Part shown: positions 8,374 to 59,800 of the stretch, one piece after another
How positions within the stretch are numbered: the stretch's first letter is position 1
Layout of the letters: each line of letters opens with the position of its first letter
Assembly (NCBI GenBank): GCA_024704765.1
Contig: JAKMXF010000044.1
Coordinates: forward strand, 883,082 to 947,081
DNA length: 64,000 nucleotides
Direction: 5' to 3'
Source of the DNA: Oopsacas minuta
Lineage: Eukaryota; Animalia; Porifera
The notes under the pieces: generated by a model
Told to the model about the DNA's origin: nothing
Databases searched by the model: none
What the model saw: the letters and a program-made list of their open reading frames with translations, nothing else
Translations under genes and position numbers: made by a program

Positions 8374-11300
8374 ATGATATCGAGTATAATGGAGCGTTAC
8401 AATACCTGGGAGATACCAGAAGATGGGAGTGAAGATACTACACGAGAGAAAGCTTGTCTTGGTTCAGCACTGGATTACTGTGAAGAAGCAGGTGAATTAA
8501 TTAGACTATCAGAGAATATACCAGATCTTATTCAGGATGAGCTTACAGCAGAATCATTCTTTGAGAGGCTAATATATGTCCTCAATCGCTACCAGGAACA
8601 GCCTGGACTTCTTGACTCTCATATGGAGAAGCTATTGACCCCCTGTCTCATCCGTCTCAGGAACACCCCTAACCTAGTCCCCCCTGCCCCCTACATTCTA
8701 TACTCCTGTAAATTCGTTTTCCTACTAGCTAAGGTCCGTGGTACTAAGAGTATATTACGTTGGTTCCCTCATGATGTTTCAGATCTAGAACCTATACTTT
8801 TAGCCTTAGAACAACAGGATCCTAACGAGTTCAGTACCTGGGAGGTACGTTTCACCCTCCTCCTTTGGCTTGCCATGGTATGTATAGTCCCATTCGATAT
8901 ATCACGTTTTGACACCTCCCTACAGCGTGTTTCCACAATGGATAGGATTTTACAGATAGCTAAAGTATACATTGATGCTCAGGATAAAACACGAGAGGTT
9001 ACAGTACTTGTTATAGGTCGATTCTTATCACGACCTGACGTGGCTAAAGCTAGACTAGACGATTATCTGGAGTGGAGCTTCGTAACACTAGATAAAGCTA
9101 TAAATAGCTCTATAGGAGGACTTAGTACAATTAGCGGTATTTTACTAGCTCTATCTACCCTGTACAAGTTCAGTAAGAGAGAGGAAATAGTAACATACTC
9201 TGTAACTGTACTGGAGAGAATTAAGTCACTAAATCTATTCTCTAACAAACATACGATTATTCGTAAGCTAAATTCTAAAGTGCTACAGAGATGTGGTCTC
9301 TCATTCCTAAGAGCCAGGCCTGCTGCTTGGAGATACCAGCGTGGTAGCAGATCTCTCATTCAAGCTCTTGATCCTGACAAATATCGCGCTCAGCAAGAAG
9401 CTAACAAGAGTACAGCTGATGCTCTGAGCACTGAACTAGGACCTAGCGGTAGTGAGGATGAGGATTATGTCCCAGAAGCAGTAGAGGAAGTATTAGAACT
9501 ATTGCTAGTCGGTCTATCTGACAGAGACACTATAGTCAGATGGTCAGCTGCTAAGGGACTAGGGAGGATATCTAGTCGTCTCTCTCAGTCGAATGCTGAT
9601 GACGTAGTACACACTATACTGGAGTTCTTCTCTATACGACAGAGTGACTCAGGTTGGCATGGAGGTTGTCTAGCGTTAGCAGAGCTAGCTAGAAGAGGAG
9701 TACTACTCCCTGAACGTCTTAAAGAAGTAGTTCCTCTTGTCCTACAGGGACTAGTGTATGATGAGAAGAGAGGAGCCTCTAGTGTAGGTGCTCATGTTAG
9801 AGACGCTGCTTGTTTCGTGTGTTGGGCATTTGCACGGGCTTATGATCCTAAACTGCTACAGCATTATGTTAATGAGTTAGCACAGTCGTTAGTTAACGTA
9901 TCACTATTTGACAGAGAGGTGAACTGTCGTAAAGCTGCTTCAGCAGCCTTCCAGGAAAGCGTAGGACGTCTGGGTACATTTCCACAGGGATTAGAGCTTG
10001 TAACTATAATGGACTATCATGCTGTGTGTAACAAAAATTATACCTACAAAGACCTGAGTATTAAAATAGCTCAGATAGATGATTACAGACATACCATTAT
10101 AGATGAACTATATCTAAGGAAACTGTTACATTGTGATCTGGTCATTCGAGAATTGTCAGCACATGCTCTGGGCAAACTGGTCCCTTTAGATCCTAACTAT
10201 TTCTCTGATAAAGTTCTCCTTAGACTAATCCCACAGACACTAGCTATTGACCTCCAAGAGAGACATGGTGTATTGCTAGGAATAGGTTTTATAGTACACG
10301 CTCTATCCCAATTGGATAATGAACGTTCCATTGAGATTATCCTTGGCAATAAATGTGTACTACAGCTGCAAGGAATAGCGAGTAATCTAGAAAGTGCTAA
10401 GTTGTATCGTGGAATGGGAGGTAAAATACTCCGCCCAGCAGCAATGAAATTCATAGAAAAATTGGCACTCTCCAACCTCCCTACTACCAGTGAGGTGTTG
10501 GACGTTTGGAGAGCCTCTCTGGATGAGAATCTACAAGAACCAGACCGTGCTACTCAGGAACGTGCCTTAGAAGCCTTCAGAGAGGTATGCTCACACTGCT
10601 ATCAGAATCTACCAGCTAATGAGCTAGCTAACGTACTCAGTAATTTGTTGAAGAATGCATTTGAACAACTCAAATCAACTGTACACTTCGCACGGATGGG
10701 ATTCTCTCTGGCACTTGGAGTCCTCCCCTACTCCTTCTACCAGGCTGACGGTAACATAGATAAGATTATCCATGCTCTGATATCATGTACTATTCATGAC
10801 GACATGAATCAAGCTATATTTACTGAAGCTAGAAGAGATGCTATAGTCTCAATTGGTAATATTTGTAATATAGTAGGAATAGATAGAGAAGATAATTCAG
10901 TCAGTGCTGTTACTCCTAAGCTACTAGCTGACATATACTCATGTCTCTTTGAAGCACTCAAAAACTACTCAATAGACAACAGAGGAGATATAGGGGCTGC
11001 AGTGAGAGAGGCTAGCATGCACGTATTGGTAGCTCTATCTCAACAAGTTATCAAACAACAAATAAATCTCTTCCAAGAGGATTGGTGTATTGATATGTTA
11101 TGTGGTCTTATTAAACAAGCTAATGAGAGGATAGATCGTGTCAGACTTACAGCTAGTTCTTCTATTATAACTCTTATACATAAATCTGCAATAGATATTC
11201 CTTACATACCTCATATCAATGAGCTGAGGAAAATATTCCCACAAGATCCCACACAACTTATAAACCCCAGTGAATCATTCAGTATTACTGTTAAAGCTAT

Positions 11301-53539: not shown

Positions 53540-54065
53540 TTAGACCTCTCCATAACTTCAGGAAATATAGTTTTTCGTGTTATTTATGTTACTGTCCACC
53601 TCCTTCGCCCAAAAAATATTTTCTTTGGCCAATTTATGTCTGAATTCCAAGATTTAATTGAGCGAGTATATACTAACCAACATAAGTTAATCTTAGCTAG
53701 TGATTTTAATATAAAATTTGACTTAGTTTTAGATCCAGAGAGAGAATCCGATTTAGTGATGCTCTTGAGACAATTGACTTTCAAAACACATAAAATCTCC
53801 AACTCATATTTCAGGTCACACTCTAGATCTTGTGATCACAAAGTGTTCAAATAGTGATTCTATTAAATCCCTCAATACTTTTTCAGATAGTCCTTCAGAC
53901 CATTCCTATATCATTTGTGATGTATACTATCCTCGGCCTAACTTCCAAAATACAATTTGTATAGAGAAAAGTGCACAAACAAATCTGAAAATATTATTCC
54001 TGTACTTATGAACTTACACTGGTTACCAGTCAAAGCTCGTATTGAATACAAAATCCTGAAAATTG
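53540..54065 (+). mobile_element. L2/CR1-type LINE relic, left part
   Basis: Endonuclease-like KLILASDFNI and RT C-terminal LHWLPVKARIEYKILK. Confidence 0.75.
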
Positions 54066-54084
54066 GAGTTATTTAAAAGTGAGT

Positions 54085-54119
54085 AGCGCATGCGCTGCAT
54101 TTTGAGTAGCGCATGCGCT
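54085..54119. promoter_or_regulatory. Two NRF1-consensus palindromes AGCGCATGCGCT (54085..54096, 54108..54119) at the left end
   Basis: Exact GCGCATGCGC, the established NRF1 consensus; copies start 23 bp apart, upstream of the gene at 54343. Confidence 0.8.
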
Positions 54120-54342
54120 ACATTAATATATAATTGGAATTTTGGAAAAAAGTAGGCTCTCAAATTACATCCTATTATAGTGTAATTAAATCCGCAGGAA
54201 CTGATATTAATTTTTGAGTTTTGTTACTTATTTCTACTTCCTTTATTAGCAAAATCCCTAAATATGTTTCTCAATTAACTTTATACTTTACTCAATCAGT
54301 GTTTCCTCTTGATTTCCCATTCTGTACCCTTGATTAGCCAAA

Positions 54343-56059
54343 ATGCCAAAGATCCCCAAATTGACAAAGAATAATGCTATAATGGTACTGACAGACATAT
54401 TATCTGAGTTTCGTTCAGTAACAGGTGAATATGCCGGAGCTGTATTTTCATGGCATGGAAAGCTTGGCTCTTTGGGTCCAGAAAAATTTCAAAGCTATAT
54501 CACTGGGAATAGCGCTGAAATATCAAGAACTCTACTGACTAACCAAATATCTACAAGTACGTCAGCGTCATCAAAGCCTGTTCGTGATCACGAAATCCTC
54601 AAGCTATTAGATGGAGATATATCTGGCTATAATGTACAGGGACTGCGAAGACTTGTTTCTGCGATTATAAAAGTGTCAACTGGTAAGTCAACGGTGTGAA
54701 TTTATATAATTATATGGGTCACTGATTATATATCTCTGTATTTTAGGGAAAGGTATGTTTTTTTGGAATGATCCTTCTCTCAAACCACCTTTTTGGCCCG
54801 AAAGAGTCCCTTTCGAAAACATAAAAAGCGCATGTAAGATTCATCTGCGTATGATAATAGAATCATATAAGGATTACTCTATGAAAGCGCGAGTTTCAGT
54901 CCGCCCTCAATCTCAGAAGTCTCCAAGCTCTTCTCAAGCATCGCGACATGATATCTACCGTGACCGATCTAGATCTCCTCTTGATTTCGCTAGAGATGTA
55001 ATACACCAAGAATCTGATGTAGATACTAGTGATGATTCCTTCGATGAGCTTTTTCAGCAACCCGTTATCGCTTCGAACAAACCTATTTCAGATCCTCAAA
55101 CACCTACCCCAACTTCCAGTCTGGTGACATTACTCGGAGTTAAGCCATTGGATCCTATCCAAATAATCACTCCTCCCATTAGTTTAAATGAGAAAAACTT
55201 GTCAATTTCTGAATTGTCAAGTCGTAATACTTTCCTAACAGGCACCACCATTAATGCATTCTGTGTAAGTTTATTATACATTGAAATTCAATCCGTTTTG
55301 TTAGCAAATATTCTCATACCATATATGTATTTGTAGACATTACTGAAGAAGAATTTCCCCCATTTACAGGGACTTCAGGATACTATTCTCTCCGAAGTGA
55401 GTTTCTCGGTTTAAATTTTTGAATTGTAAATCAATATTTGATATTCAATTAATTCTTAGAATCGTCAATTCGTCAAAGCTCCTCGTCCTAGTATACAACT
55501 GCATCACGATGGCGCACTTCACTGGGTTTGCTCCAGTATTGATGTTGAAGGGCATGTAACTTTATATGATTCGCTATCTACTGGGAGAATATCTGATGAA
55601 TTAGCTGTGCAATTGGCCTTCCTATATGGAAATGATGCTGATCATGAGCTGAAAGTCGCCCTTGCTCCTATTCAGCAGCAAAGAGGTGGGGCGGATTGTG
55701 GTTTATTTGCAGCGGCAGTCTGTTTGACAATAGCAACGGGAGGCGACCCAACCCAAGTATACTGGAAACAGTCAAGAATGAGATCTCACCTAACTGATTG
55801 TTTCAACAGCGAAATTTTGACACCCTTTCCTAAGATAGAAAGAATAGTATTACGATCTCGCCTGACTACAAATCTAGGGACAGATTTAAAGATAAAGTTA
55901 TGGTGTTTATGTCATCTACCCAGTTGCGCGTCAAAAAATATGATTGAATGTCCCAAATGTCTTAAATGGTTCCACAAACCATGTGTAGGACTTGAAGATA
56001 TTGACAAAGACATCGATAACTTTTATTGTCACAATTGTCGTGAGTCTCCTAACATATAA
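54343..56059 (+). CDS. NRF1-like DNA-binding domain + Ulp1/C48-type protease + PHD finger, 4 exons, 505 aa
   Basis: Exons 54343-54682, 54747-55264, 55337-55396, 55460-56059 (GT-AG, 1518 nt in frame). KVSTGKG..W..KPPFWPE; His (HWV), Asp (YDS), Gln/Cys (QQQRGGADCG); C4HC3 WCLC..CPKC.KWFHKPC..YCHNC. Confidence 0.85.
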
Positions 56060-56066
56060 ACTATTT

Positions 56067-59000
56067 TCATATATTATTATTTTGTGATAGAATATGTAGA
56101 TTCAAACATGCTAGAAAATATCTTGTAGTGAAGAATACATTATCAATACGCATGTATGCGATTTGTGTTGCTATCCTTCTTAGTGATGAAAACAACTGCT
56201 CGCAAATTTGTGAGTTTAGCTTTTTCATCTCGTCAGTCTGAATTGATCTCAAAGAATAAGAGGGATTGCACTTGTGGTTTGTAGAATGGAATCGATCAAT
56301 CAGAAATGTTGTCTTACGAAATACTTTGGGGTCCCTATATAAAAAATCACGAATTAATTTCTATTTGAAATCTCGATTATTTATCATTTATACCCAATTT
56401 GTTATGTGCACTTACCTTTTCATACATGTTTTGTGTAAGTTGCAAGCATTATCGTAGATGATCACTTTTGGCTGTTCTCTGAATATGGTCATTAACAAAT
56501 TATAAATTACAACTGTAGATTCGTGTTGTCTGAGGATTTGGAAACCATAACAAATCCTGTGCTTACAAGCGATTGCTACTATTCCGGGGGAAAACCTTTT
56601 GTGAGTTGGAAACTTTTTGAGACACGGTTCAGCTGACTCAACTTCTGGATTTTCGTATACTGGCAACCTGTACAATTATAGTAGAATGGTAAAATATAAA
56701 AAAAGTTGAATAGCATTTAGTATTTTCAGTATAAACACAATTACAAGTTTGAACTTACATGTAGTTTGTTGTGAATGCTGGGAAATAATTGTAGTAGTTT
56801 TCGCTTTGTGGAGAATATTCCACTAATTTTCTTGACGTTCTACTAAATAAACTCTCTATTTGTGTCAGGATTCTTTTCAACAGCGGGAAAACTTTGGGAT
56901 GTAAAGTGACAAACCCTGTGCATGTGATATCTTTATTAGGTTTGATAGAATTGAATAAGATATCCAATGTATACATCTTCTGATATATTGAATTAAAGGA
57001 ATCTTCACTTGCTGATTTTCCATTGGCAAGAAGAGCTATTGCTTTCCGTTCATTCGGTTCCAGCAGAGAGAATTGGAATACTCCTGATATTGGATCTGTA
57101 TGGCAAAGGAGTTTTATGACTTTCTTAACATGTATATATTCTTCACTTATAGTCACTAAATTTTCTGTCCTAATGGAACTAAATAAAATATAATCAGCCA
57201 TTTCTTTATGAATAGACTTCAATAGGTCTTTTAGCGTATTTTCTGTCAAACCTTCAGAACAGAATTTAAGGAGTTGCTTTCTAATTGCTGTGTCGGGGAT
57301 AAAAACACGATCTGAAAATGGGATCATAGGGTATTGCTGATCCTGATCGAATTTTGCATCCACTTCTGGTACTGATTTCATTGTTCCCATCGCTATGCCA
57401 TCTAAAATTATCACATCGGGATGATTTTTACACTTTGGACATATGTAGTTCGAGTCATAATCTATGTCTACTGTTCTCAGATAGGCGTTCCATGCCTGAT
57501 AAACAATGTGATAATGGAATGTATTCGTTCTACCCATTCTGATAAGCTTCCTGTTCTTGGCACTAAAGAGTAAAACGAAGAATTAGATTGTATGTATATA
57601 GGAATTTTAATTTATCAAGAATATATTTTAAACAATACATACCTCAAGTAACCGTACAAAGTATTTCTAGACATGGTCATCAACTCGCTATAATCATATA
57701 ACAAACTGTAATGAACAAAATACTTGTTGTTGATGTTTAACAGTGAACTGTTCTGACCTTCGAAGACTGCCAAGCAATTGCAAAGTCCACTGCATCTTGA
57801 ACTGTAAACTATATACTTACAATATAATTACTGAGTTACCAAGCACAGGCAAATTTAGGGAGGGGGTAAATTGGGACGAGTTGATTGCAATCGAATGAAC
57901 AATCTTATATGTAGACCAAATATTTATTGAAATTCCTTTATAATTGCAAGACTTGTTTTCAACGGCTAAATACGTAGAATAACCGATCATACTAAATTAA
58001 AATTGCGACCGAGCGAATGGTTCATTGATGATAAATATATACTTTTGTAATCTTTGAATTCATTAATATCATTTTCTAAATAGATAACTATTCCAACCTT
58101 CTCTAGTTTAAGCTTCTCCTCTTCATTGAATTTGAAACCATAGTCACAAAATTCCTTTTCAGGATACATATTTAAAGGTAAATTGATGCCATGGAAGAGC
58201 TGATAGTTGTAAATTGCTATTTGGCTTTCATCTAGATTGAATGGTATTGCTCTTGTTGATATCGTGTTATATTCAAACTTTTTCTGTGTATTTGATCCAG
58301 TATTTTCGAGAATATTATGGAGTCTAGAATGTTGTTTGCACTTTGAAGAACAAGAACAACATAACCACCTATCATTATTTAATTGGAAGTTGTGAAAAGT
58401 ATCATCTGTCAACAGAAAGATATCGTTAGGACTTGGGAAATAATATATTATGTCTTCTAGAATGTTTGCTTCACAAACTTGCAAACAATCATTTTGTGAA
58501 CAGAGTTCAAATGCTTGATAATGAGAACAAGTATCACTATAACAATTGGCGCATAGATTGCTGTTTGTTTCAATTATGATTCTCCTTTTGTTTAGTACAA
58601 CGGTTCCTTGAAATACAAAATGTTTAGTTATGGTAGTGAGAATAGTAAATGTACAGTAGACTCCGATTAATAGGGTCACTTGGGACCAGGCCATTTGACC
58701 CGATTAACCGAAATAAAGGTGTTGGGCCCTACGAACCGGAGCAGAGAGACAAACATGCAAACAGACAACAATAATAGCGATAATAACGTAAATTTACCTT
58801 GAGAGTAATCATAATCTGCAATTATAACATATTCACTATCCTCTAACTTTTGTATGTGAGACTTCAATATCAATAGTTTTACATACTGGTCAATTATAGG
58901 CATTTCTACTTGTTTCATTTCTGGTTCTGAGAAGCAATCAGGTTGACACTGATCTATGCGAAATATTATATTGAATCAACAAGCAACTAAAGTTTGCTTG

Positions 59001-59264
59001 AAAGCATAAGGAATTAAGAATATAATTATCACCTGTTTTTGACCATGTTGGTACATCTGATTCTATCAATTTAAATGATTCCCCTTCTGATAGGCATACT
59101 TTGTCGATGTCTAATGTGATGAAGCTGATATCTTCTTTCTCCGAGATTTTTCGTTTTTTTGGGTATATATTATCAGATCCAGTTTGTGAAGTTACTTTTT
59201 CAGCCATTTCCAAAATGAAATTATCTAATGAATGGTATAAATTTATATATCTACTTCTATACAT
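56067..59264 (-). CDS. KDZ-family (HMGXB3/Zisupton-related) transposase, 7 exons, ~813 aa
   Basis: Exons 59264-59033, 58953-58798, 58606-58043, 57808-57643, 57562-56759, 56667-56416, 56334-56067 (GT-AG, 2442 nt, no stops). SWIM-like CxxC-C-H and Cys clusters; IILDG, PG..ACKH..YG..ES, IIYDNAC, IDRFH..NH, NSQICEQ. Confidence 0.85.
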
Positions 59265-59408
59265 TATAAATGCACCAGCATTCCAATGACCACTTGTCGT
59301 AATGTGGTTTCGAAACTTATCTAATCACATTCAATTCAGCAGTTTGGGTAACTATGGTTGAAATGATAACGCGTATCTATAAATATGACATACCAATAAT
59401 CCTAATGC

Positions 59409-59420
59409 AGCGCATGCGCT
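59409..59420. promoter_or_regulatory. NRF1-consensus palindrome AGCGCATGCGCT in the right TIR
   Basis: Exact motif, about 145 bp upstream of the transposase ATG on the minus strand. Confidence 0.8.
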
Positions 59421-59439
59421 ACTCATTTTTAAATATATG

Positions 59440-59800
59440 GAAAATTGTTTACAAAATTTATCTTAAGAGTTTGATATCTTTTTCAGAATCTTACTTATGA
59501 CCATAGATCACTGCTTCGAACCTACTTCGACAACCCAGGTCTATAACAAAAAATTATGGTGACCGTGCACTTTCATATGCTGCACCAAAACTATGGAATT
59601 CACTCTCTGATTAAATATGAAAATCTGCTTCACTGGAAATATTTAAAAAATAAATCAAAAAATATTCTTATTTAAACTTCATTACCTGTAAATATTGTTT
59701 TATGAGTTAAGTACTTCTGTATTTGATTGCATATTATGTATATTTATCCGTAATTTGACCCGTAAACGCTTTGAGACTCTGCGGAAAGCGTACAAATACT
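59440..59800 (+). mobile_element. L2/CR1-type LINE relic, right part
   Basis: IVYK..YLKSLI and YGDRA.SYAAPKLWNSL, followed by a (TAT)n tail. Confidence 0.75.

What the first reader, a model, noticed from the sequence alone, without database searches (positions are those of the whole stretch)
54066..59439. Transposon encodes an NRF1-like DNA-binding protein and carries NRF1 consensus sites in its own termini
Seen: splicing exon 1 to exon 2 gives DISGYNVQGLRRLVSAIIKVSTGKGMFFWNDPSLKPPFWPERVPFENI. This aligns without gaps to human NRF1 as I remember it (SVDKMTQAQLRAFIPEMLKYSTGRGKPGWGKESCKPIWWPEDIPWANV), 16/48 identical, including KxSTGxG, W and KPxxWPE. The N-terminal part (LTDILSEFRSVTGEYAGAV) resembles the NRF1 dimerisation segment (LRATLDEYTTRVGQQAIVL). 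Seen: AGCGCATGCGCT occurs twice at the left end and once at the right end; I saw no other full copy in the window. Established: GCGCATGCGC is the NRF1/EWG consensus. Inference: the accessory protein recognises the TIRs (end binding or autoregulation), or the element plugs into the host NRF1 network. This would link the NRF1 fold to mobile DNA, as a transposon origin or a capture. I know of no description of this pairing.
Basis: partly seen in the sequence, partly recalled or inferred. Interest (0 to 1): 0.95.

Follow-up and report, generated by a model that had tools for sequence, protein, structure and literature searches.

The report
Transposon with NRF1-like end-binding protein
An intact, transcribed DNA transposon of a glass sponge carries, beside its transposase, a gene whose protein has the dimeric DNA-binding module of the animal transcription factor NRF1, and the NRF1 recognition sequence sits at a fixed position in both ends of the element, so the element very probably encodes its own end-binding protein.

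Summary

**The element**
- Window 54066-59439 is an intact two-gene KDZ/Zisupton-type DNA transposon.
- It has an 8-bp target duplication (GAAAATTG) and 39-nt inverted repeats.
- It encodes a 794-aa KDZ transposase and a convergent 505-aa accessory protein. All introns match spliced contigs.

**The accessory protein**
- Its N-terminus is homologous to NRF1.
  - Spliced or exon-level relatives pass Pfam's Nrf1_DNA-bind threshold.
  - A family profile finds only NRF1 in the PDB (E 2.5e-6).
- Base-contact residues R206 and N242 are kept; R244 is K.
- A Ulp1 protease and a PHF2-like PHD finger follow.

**The sites**
- GCGCATGCGC occurs three times in 64 kb, all in the termini.
- Nine related elements from other assemblies (one shown to be a glass sponge) have homologous termini.
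- In 14 of 15 ends a CATG-centred palindrome starts at exactly nucleotide 17. It is often repeated every 21-24 bp.
- The outer bases differ by protein subfamily: GCGC, ACAC/GTGT or GATC.

**Reading**
- This favours element-encoded end binding over use of host NRF1.
- Binding itself is untested.
- I found no published description.
- First readers of this scan noted the same family on other pieces of this genome.

The parts
54058..54065 (.). Left copy of the 8-bp target-site duplication GAAAATTG
   Evidence: Identical 8-mer directly outside both ends. 8 bp is the Zisupton TSD length (PMC12730594).
54066..59439 (.). Whole KDZ/Zisupton-type transposon, 5374 bp
   Evidence: Bounded by the TSD and TIRs. 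Flanks of other genomic copies diverge at 54070/54071 and after 59435.
54070..54108 (+). Left terminal inverted repeat (starts TATTTAAAAGT)
   Evidence: 39 nt, 90% complementary to 59397-59435. Homologous to the TATTAAAAAGTAC termini of elements in loci L001-L009.
54086..54095 (.). NRF1-type palindrome GCGCATGCGC, site 1, starting at nt 17 of the TIR
54109..54118 (.). NRF1-type palindrome GCGCATGCGC, site 2, 23 bp after site 1
54343..54682 (+). Accessory gene exon 1: MADS-like dimerisation domain and the first helix of the NRF1-type DBD (R102 = NRF1 R206)
   Evidence: ORF. 47 homologues found. R102 is nearly invariant. Fold of relative P0048.
54683..54746 (+). Intron 1 (GT..AG, 64 nt), splitting the DBD
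   Evidence: Loose contig ends reproduce the spliced junction. The reading frame is restored.
54747..55264 (+). Accessory gene exon 2: second half of the NRF1-type DBD (W120, W130, N138 = N242, K140 = R244), then a low-complexity linker and the start of the Ulp1 domain
   Evidence: Pfam Nrf1_DNA-bind E 0.043 for this piece alone. The profile of 8 such pieces hits NRF1 8k4l_A at E 2.5e-6.
55337..55396 (+). Accessory gene exon 3
   Evidence: GT..AG joints 55264>55337 and 55396>55460 in run X1.
55460..56059 (+). Accessory gene exon 4: Ulp1/C48 protease core (about 55508-55753) and PHD finger (about 55904-56038), with stop
   Evidence: Pfam Peptidase_C48 E 1e-3 and PHD E 6e-5. PHD to PHF2 3kqi E 9.4e-12; Ulp1-like 6dg4 E 0.014. 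Orthologous exon in L002 is above the C48 threshold.
56067..59207 (-). KDZ transposase gene, 7 exons, 794 aa intact: 59207-59033, 58953-58798, 58606-58043, 57808-57643, 57562-56759, 56667-56416, 56334-56067
   Evidence: Gene model, GT..AG at every intron. Five of the six introns correspond to spliced joints or loose ends in run X1. The first (59032-58954) has a donor confirmed by the exon-skipping joint, and its acceptor was chosen by open frame.
56070..56666 (-). KDZ (Kyakuja-Dileera-Zisupton) catalytic region in exons 6 and 7
   Evidence: Pfam PF18758: E 1.7e-3 (profile 76-133) and 3.6e-4 (profile 146-202) on consecutive exons. The 67%-identical O. minuta protein P0075 scores 39 bits, above threshold.
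59397..59435 (-). Right terminal inverted repeat
59410..59419 (.). NRF1-type palindrome GCGCATGCGC, again starting at nt 17 of the TIR
59440..59447 (.). Right copy of the target-site duplication GAAAATTG

Best explanation
The stretch is an intact, expressed, multi-copy KDZ/Zisupton-type cut-and-paste transposon of a glass sponge, very probably Oopsacas minuta. It carries two convergent genes.

**Genes**
- One encodes the KDZ transposase.
- The other encodes a 505-aa accessory protein. Its N-terminal ~155 residues are a diverged homologue of the NRF1/EWG module: a MADS-like dimerisation domain plus the NRF1 DNA-binding domain. A linker, a Ulp1-type cysteine protease and a PHF2/BPTF-like PHD finger follow.

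**Proposed mechanism (inferred, not shown)**
- The accessory protein dimerises and binds the CATG-centred palindromes in the terminal repeats. These start 17 nt inside each TATTAAAAAGT terminus and, where repeated, recur about every two helical turns.
- The arginine equivalent to NRF1 R206 reads the invariant central TpG steps.
- The loop equivalent to NRF1 N242/R244 reads the outer three bases, which differ between subfamilies.
- Binding marks the element's own ends for the transposase, in the way that accessory or subterminal-repeat binders work in PIF/Harbinger and En/Spm.
- It also brings the protease and the histone reader to the two terminal promoters.

I regard end recognition as the primary role, because the site's register relative to the terminus is invariant.
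For: **Shown: the element**
- 8-bp TSD, 39-nt TIR, both ORFs open, introns confirmed by spliced contigs, many 95-99% identical copies.
- KDZ domain.

**Shown: NRF1 homology**
- Relative P0010 scores 25.4-27.5 bits on PF10491 (threshold 23.5).
- Exon-2 pieces of L009 and L001 score 32.1 and 25.9 bits. Every other exon-2 piece but one has PF10491 as its top family; in L005 it is second to a weak PF11001 hit.
- The 8-sequence profile hits NRF1 chains at 2.5e-6 and 1.5e-5; the next hit is 0.74.
- R102, W120, N138 and K140 of the window protein align without indel to NRF1 R206, W224, N242 and R244.

**Shown: the DNA side**
- The experimentally defined NRF1 site occurs only in the termini.
- Nine related elements from at least four other assemblies have homologous termini. 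One assembly is shown to be a glass sponge by an 86%-identical Piwi B. In five of them (L002, L003, L004, L007, L009) the same convergent two-gene layout was also seen.
- The first palindrome starts at nt 17 in 14 of 15 ends. Repeat periods are 21-24 bp, with up to about 17 copies.
- Outer bases track protein clades: the GATC clade has support 96/93, the TGTG clade 93/93, and GCGC is paraphyletic.
- The central TG and the R206 equivalent never vary.
Against: - No binding experiment exists.
- The window protein's own pieces score below Pfam's threshold (E 0.043). Its membership rests on transitive homology (phmmer 1.4e-13 to P0010).
- The exon-1 profile alone does not find NRF1.
- The structure model is of a 41%-identical relative, with mean pLDDT 72.5.
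- There is no simple residue-to-base code. L009 has N-V-R as in NRF1 but GATC sites, and L007 has N-V-T with GCGC sites.
- Motif type and protein clade could co-vary by common descent alone, since only two switches are seen.
- The transposase has a Cys-rich N-terminal region that could itself read the ends.
- One divergent relative (L008) has direct AGCGCGT repeats instead of palindromes.
Confidence: 0.68

Rival explanations
1. The terminal palindromes are the binding sites of the KDZ transposase itself, for instance through its cysteine-rich N-terminal region. The NRF1-like protein would act elsewhere, on host NRF1-type sites or as a chromatin or SUMO regulator. The match between its domain family and the terminal motif would then be coincidental or secondary.
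For: - KDZ transposases carry Cys clusters proposed to recognise DNA or chromatin (Iyer 2014, as cited in PMC12062965).
- Exon 3 of this transposase is Cys-rich.
- A fixed register from the terminus is what one expects of a transposase site.
- No clean residue-to-base code was found for the NRF1-like domain.
Against: - The commonest and apparently ancestral terminal motif is exactly the 10-bp site solved in complex with NRF1 (PMC10810270). It is found nowhere else in 64 kb.
- The invariant part of the sites (TpG) is the part read by the invariant arginine.
- No Pfam CxC domain was detected in the transposase.
Confidence: 0.14
2. The palindromes are promoter elements through which the host's own NRF1 drives the two inward-facing genes. 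The element-encoded NRF1-like protein would be a competitor or modulator of host NRF1, so the element plugs into the host network.
For: - Each TIR lies about 190-260 bp upstream of a start codon: 54086-54118 against ATG 54343, and 59410-59419 against ATG 59207.
- NRF1 sites are classically promoter-proximal (general knowledge).
- Four or five lineages keep the exact NRF1 consensus.
Against: - Two subfamilies replaced the site by ACACATGTGY or GATCATGATC. NRF1 mutagenesis shows any GCGC change weakens binding.
- They nevertheless kept position, period and copy number.
- Arrays of up to 17 sites, and an invariant distance from the cleavage end, are not promoter features.
- No other NRF1-type site occurs in this gene-dense 64-kb window.
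Confidence: 0.1
3. The accessory protein is mainly a sequence-targeted anti-silencing factor. The NRF1-like dimer would tether the Ulp1 deSUMOylase and the H3K4me3-type PHD reader to the element's own ends, to keep them free of SUMO-dependent heterochromatin. It would have no direct role in the transposition chemistry.
For: - The Ulp1 + PHD fusion is conserved in all full-length relatives.
- The PHD is closest to PHF2/PHF8/BPTF.
- Family-specific tandem motif arrays that change with the protein recall the VANC system of Arabidopsis VANDAL elements (own knowledge; alluded to in PMC12730594).
Against: - The exact nt-17 register at both ends argues for a geometric role at the cleavage site.
- The protease hit is weak in the window copy (E 1e-3), and no substrate is known.
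- This reading is compatible with the best explanation rather than exclusive of it.
Confidence: 0.08

Closest known systems
NRF1 / EWG / Nrf family of animal transcription factors (Pfam PF10491; PDB 8K4L, 8K3D)
   Same: - Two-domain module: MADS-like dimerisation domain plus DBD.
- Same spacing of the R206, W224 and N242 equivalents.
- A palindromic GCGCATGCGC site is associated with it.
   Different: - Only about 16-19% structure-based identity; R244 is K.
- No NRF1 C-terminal activation region. A Ulp1 protease and a PHD finger stand in its place.
- Encoded inside a multi-copy transposon.
- Subfamilies are associated with non-NRF1 palindromes.
Zisupton / KDZ superfamily of DNA transposons (Bohne 2012; Iyer 2014; PF18758)
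   Same: KDZ transposase domain, 8-bp TSD, TIRs, and a multi-exon transposase gene.
   Different: - A separate convergent accessory gene with an NRF1-type DNA-binding module.
- Termini built around CATG palindromes at a fixed register.
- I found no description of this in the searchable literature. The two founding papers could not be read.
PIF/Harbinger Myb-like protein and En/Spm TnpA (accessory DNA-binding proteins of two-gene transposons)
   Same: A second element-encoded protein that binds terminal or subterminal repeats and cooperates with the transposase (own knowledge). Two-ORF organisation.
   Different: - Unrelated DNA-binding folds and a different transposase superfamily.
- Here the binder is fused to a protease and a histone reader.
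VANC anti-silencing proteins of Arabidopsis VANDAL (Mutator-like) elements, and Ulp1-carrying KI-MULEs
   Same: - Element-encoded, sequence-specific proteins whose short target motifs are tandemly arrayed in the element and diverge together with the protein.
- Ulp1 protease domains recur in transposon accessory proteins (own knowledge).
   Different: - Different DNA-binding domain and a different host kingdom.
- VANC sites are not locked to the terminus.

Membership tests
NRF1/EWG DNA-binding module (PF10491) | Significant match to the Nrf1_DNA-bind profile | tested here: met
   - Relatives above the gathering score of 23.5: P0010 25.4-27.5 bits, L009 exon 2 32.1, L001 exon 2 25.9.
- The window's exon 2 alone gives E 0.043, as top family.
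- The window's exon 1 matches P0010 by phmmer at 1.4e-13.
- The spliced window protein could not be submitted by reference.
NRF1/EWG DNA-binding module (PF10491) | MADS-like dimerisation domain followed by the NRF1 DBD fold | tested here: met
NRF1/EWG DNA-binding module (PF10491) | Base-contacting residues R206, N242, R244 (PMC10810270) | tested here: inconclusive
   The window protein has R102 and N138 conserved, and K140 in place of R244. The 36-residue spacing is identical. Other subfamilies have Y, T or R at the third position.
NRF1/EWG DNA-binding module (PF10491) | Binds GCGCATGCGC as a homodimer | not testable with these tools
   Only indirect evidence: the site occurs three times, all in the element's termini.
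KDZ / Zisupton transposons | KDZ transposase domain (PF18758) | tested here: met
   Two consecutive exons hit consecutive parts of the profile (E 1.7e-3 and 3.6e-4). Homologue P0075 scores 39 bits against a threshold of 26.6.
KDZ / Zisupton transposons | 8-bp target-site duplication and terminal inverted repeats | tested here: met
   GAAAATTG on both sides; 39-nt TIR. L004 (CTTTCTTG) and L002 (CGTTATAC) also have 8-bp TSDs. The reference value comes from PMC12730594.
KDZ / Zisupton transposons | CxC-type zinc cluster associated with KDZ transposases | tested here: inconclusive
   Exon 3 is Cys-rich, but no Pfam CxC family was hit at E<1.
Ulp1/SENP (peptidase C48) | Profile match and His-Asp-Gln-Cys catalytic residues | tested here: inconclusive
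   - The window scores 19.4 bits, just under the threshold of 20.7. The L002 orthologue scores 23.9 bits, above it. PDB Ulp1-like 6dg4 gives E 0.014.
- HW, YDS and QQQRGGADCG motifs are readable in the translation.
- Activity was not tested.
PHD finger (H3K4me3-reader type) | C4HC3 zinc finger similar to PHF2/PHF8/BPTF | tested here: met
   PHF2 3kqi E 9.4e-12, PHF8 and BPTF 1e-7 to 1e-9. Pfam PHD E 6e-5. Histone binding was not tested.

The most novel reading that the evidence does not exclude
The NRF1/EWG transcription-factor module and this transposon protein share a mobile ancestry. Either the animal NRF1 family was domesticated from a KDZ-transposon end-binding protein, or an ancient capture turned a promoter factor into a transposon's end-recognition subunit.

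The glass-sponge elements would then preserve a natural series of specificity switches: GCGC to ACAC/GTGT to GATC half-sites, the derived sites being CpG-free. That series would expose the recognition code of the fold.
Probability: 0.2. Interest if true: 0.9.

Novelty: new variant of a known kind. Interest (0 to 1): 0.74.

Why it matters
- **A new link for NRF1.** NRF1 is a master regulator of mitochondrial and housekeeping promoters. Its DNA-binding fold was solved only in 2023 and has no known relatives outside the NRF1/EWG family. Finding that fold as the accessory subunit of an active-looking transposon, with its recognition sequence built into the ends, gives the first link between this fold and mobile DNA.
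- **A new component for KDZ/Zisupton.** It adds a new kind of end-binding partner to a poorly understood superfamily.
- **Ready-made experiments.** It offers three natural protein/site pairs for dissecting how the fold reads DNA.
- **A testable chromatin idea.** The fusion to a deSUMOylase and an H3K4me3-type reader suggests a testable way for a transposon to manage its own chromatin.

Tried and rejected
**Searches that gave nothing useful**
- The ESM Atlas search with exon 1 gave only noise, best score 0.49.
- The exon-1 profile and the mixed profile A5 did not find NRF1 in the PDB. The sequence signal lies in exon 2.
- MAFFT placed several exon-2 pieces at the wrong end (alignments A1, A4). 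I used a separate exon-2 alignment (A2) and left those rows out of the AF2 input (A5).
- The O. minuta gene models P0048 and P0010 are not in the contig index. The ends of that second family could not be read. Only a nested end seen as a loose contig end hints at a GCGC-like site.

**Loci of limited use**
- L005 lacks a consensus terminus. Only a remnant with GCGCATGCGC at 9779 was found.
- L006 lacks exon 2.
- L010 is too short.

**Ideas rejected**
- A one-residue recognition code (position 244: K/R = GCGC, Y = TGTG) fails. L009 has N-V-R with GATC, and L007 has N-V-T with GCGC.
- Recent capture of the host NRF1 gene is unlikely. None of the 47 phmmer hits is a canonical NRF1, and identity to human NRF1 is under 20%.

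**Literature**
- No paper pairs NRF1 with Zisupton/KDZ or with DNA transposon TIRs.
- One broad query was wasted.
- Bohne 2012 and Iyer 2014 are not held, so prior mention there cannot be excluded.
- UniRef already auto-names P0010 an NRF1-domain protein.

Full report
**1. What is in the sequence**

Window 54066-59439 is a complete DNA transposon.
- It is flanked by an 8-bp direct repeat, GAAAATTG, at 54058-54065 and 59440-59447.
- It ends in 39-nt inverted repeats that are 90% complementary.
- GCGCATGCGC occurs at 54086, 54109 and 59410 and nowhere else in 64 kb, even with one mismatch allowed. The expected count is 0.01 exact and 0.14 with one mismatch, and no shuffle reaches 3.

**2. Gene models and expression**

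Laying four public runs on the element showed many near-identical copies: 95-99% contigs and dozens of variant positions.

In run X1 there were contigs with canonical introns removed.
- On the plus strand the introns are 54683-54746, 55265-55336 and 55397-55459. The first was seen as loose ends that reproduce the exon-exon junction exactly.
- With these introns the plus-strand gene is an open 505-codon frame.
- The minus-strand gene assembles into 7 exons and 794 codons without a stop. Five of its six introns correspond to X1 joints or loose ends. For the first intron only the donor is confirmed.
- A minor joint skips transposase exon 2.
- The library type of X1 is not on record. 'Transcribed' is therefore an inference from the spliced contigs.

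**3. The transposase**

- Exons 6 and 7 hit consecutive parts of Pfam KDZ (E 1.7e-3 and 3.6e-4).
- The 67%-identical Oopsacas minuta protein P0075 scores 39 bits, above the threshold of 26.6.
- Zisupton makes 8-bp TSDs (PMC12730594).
- The element is therefore a KDZ/Zisupton-type transposon.
- Near-identical proteins are O. minuta gene models, so the window is very probably from that glass sponge.

**4. The accessory protein**

Sequence evidence:
- Exon 1 found 47 relatives, mostly exon-sized ORFs, and no canonical NRF1.
- P0010 is a correctly spliced O. minuta gene model of a second family (41-43% identical). It passes Pfam's own threshold for Nrf1_DNA-bind at 25.4-27.5 bits, E 1.4e-5 to 3e-6.
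- The exon-2 pieces of L009 and L001 pass as well. In every other relative but one PF10491 is the top family; in L005 it comes second to a weak PF11001 hit.
- A profile of eight exon-2 pieces finds only NRF1 in the whole PDB. E is 2.5e-6 and 1.5e-5, and the next hit is 0.74.
- The exon-1 profile alone finds nothing.

Structural evidence:
- An AlphaFold2 model of P0048:1-165 has mean pLDDT 72.5.

Base contacts:
N242 and R244 read the outer bases.
- In the window protein these positions are R102, N138 and K140, with the same 36-residue spacing.
- The arginine is nearly invariant across the family.

Downstream domains:
- A Ulp1/C48 protease follows. It is weak in the window and above threshold in the L002 orthologue.
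- A PHD finger follows that, closest to PHF2, PHF8 and BPTF at E 9.4e-12.

**5. Related elements**

Ten loci carrying exon-1 homologues were fetched from ENA assemblies.
- One assembly is a glass sponge. Its Piwi is 86% identical to O. minuta Piwi B, against at most 59% for other named sponges. The others were not identified.
- Five loci show the same convergent accessory-gene/transposase layout. One has a truncated transposase.
- All readable termini begin with TATTAAAAAGT(A/G).
- In 14 of 15 ends a CATG-centred 10-bp palindrome starts at exactly nucleotide 17. Where repeated, it recurs every 21-24 bp (mostly 22), with up to about 17 copies.

The palindrome differs by element:

| Palindrome | Elements |
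|---|---|
| GCGCATGCGC | window, L004, L005 remnant, L007 |
| GCGCATGCTC | L006b |
| ACACATGTGY | L002, L003, L006a |
| GATCATGATC | L001, L009 |

- On a tree of exon 1, the GATC and TGTG types are each one supported clade. The GCGC types are paraphyletic, which is consistent with GCGC being ancestral.
- The part of the site that never changes (TG) is the part read by the invariant arginine. The part that changes is read in NRF1 by the loop whose third residue varies here: K or T with GCGC, Y with TGTG, R with GATC.
- The correspondence is not a clean code (L009, L007). It rests on only two switches, so it is suggestive and not proof.

**6. Mechanism**

Best explanation (confidence about 0.68):
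- The accessory protein binds its own element's terminal palindromes as a dimer and marks the ends for the transposase.
- The invariant register from the terminus argues for a role at the cleavage site rather than a purely transcriptional one.
- Because each TIR also lies about 190-260 bp upstream of an inward-reading gene, the same binding may regulate expression.
- It may also bring the deSUMOylase and the histone reader to the ends.

Rivals:
- Use of host NRF1 is disfavoured by the two subfamilies with non-NRF1 sites in the same place.
- Recognition by the transposase's own Cys-rich region cannot be excluded.
- A speculative aside: the ACAC/GTGT site differs from GCGC partly by the changes that CpG deamination produces, and both derived sites are CpG-free.

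**7. Novelty**

- I found no paper linking the NRF1 domain with transposons.
- The two founding KDZ/Zisupton papers could not be read.
- UniRef already labels P0010 automatically as an NRF1-domain protein. The domain hit exists in databases, but the interpretation does not.
- First readers of this scan noted the same family on several other pieces of this genome. None of those notes had been followed up.
- I class the finding as a new variant of a known kind: a two-gene cut-and-paste transposon with an accessory end-binding protein.

Noticed in passing
window 53584-54065 and 59440-59700: The element sits inside another repeat. The flanks translate to a reverse-transcriptase-type C-terminal tail (…NLHWLPVKARIEYKILK…) that continues across the empty site.
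   Followed up: no
window 58605-59032 (minus strand): A minor spliced form skips transposase exon 2 (joint 58605>59032, depth 16 against 174 for the main form). This removes 52 codons in frame, and the frame stays open.
   Followed up: partly
window 54165 (loose ends in runs X2-X4): In other genomic copies the sequence breaks at 54165 into GGAGGTATTAAAAAGTACTGTGCGCATGTC. This is the terminus of a second, related element family nested in this one. It may be the P0010/P0048 family, whose ends I could not otherwise read.
   Followed up: partly
L001:7759-9903: A 2.1-kb minisatellite (31 bp x 69) lies between the left terminal array and the accessory gene. The transposase of this copy is truncated to about residues 191-370. 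It is a deletion derivative that keeps the accessory gene.
   Followed up: partly
L008:213-6210: A divergent relative (26-29% identity) is rearranged into a large palindrome with a Tc1/mariner (DDE_3) insertion. Its termini carry direct AGCGCGT repeats instead of CATG palindromes.
   Followed up: no
element termini in W, L001-L004, L007, L009: Outside the TATT start, the outermost 3-4 nt are not inverted. One end reads (G)AGG/(G)AGT and the other CATA/CATG. Which of the two faces the accessory gene differs between elements.
   Followed up: partly
exon-2 pieces of L005, L009 and P0010: There are weak secondary hits to Pfam PF11001 (YDR124W-like helical bundle, a fungal family), E 0.0024-0.05, over the same residues as the NRF1 DBD. 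This may be a remote relative of the fold.
   Followed up: no
L006:4417-4640 and 8917-9100: Two different family members lie within 5 kb. One has hybrid half-sites (ACACATGCGC beside ACACATGTGC), which looks like an intermediate between the GCGC and TGTG site types.
   Followed up: partly
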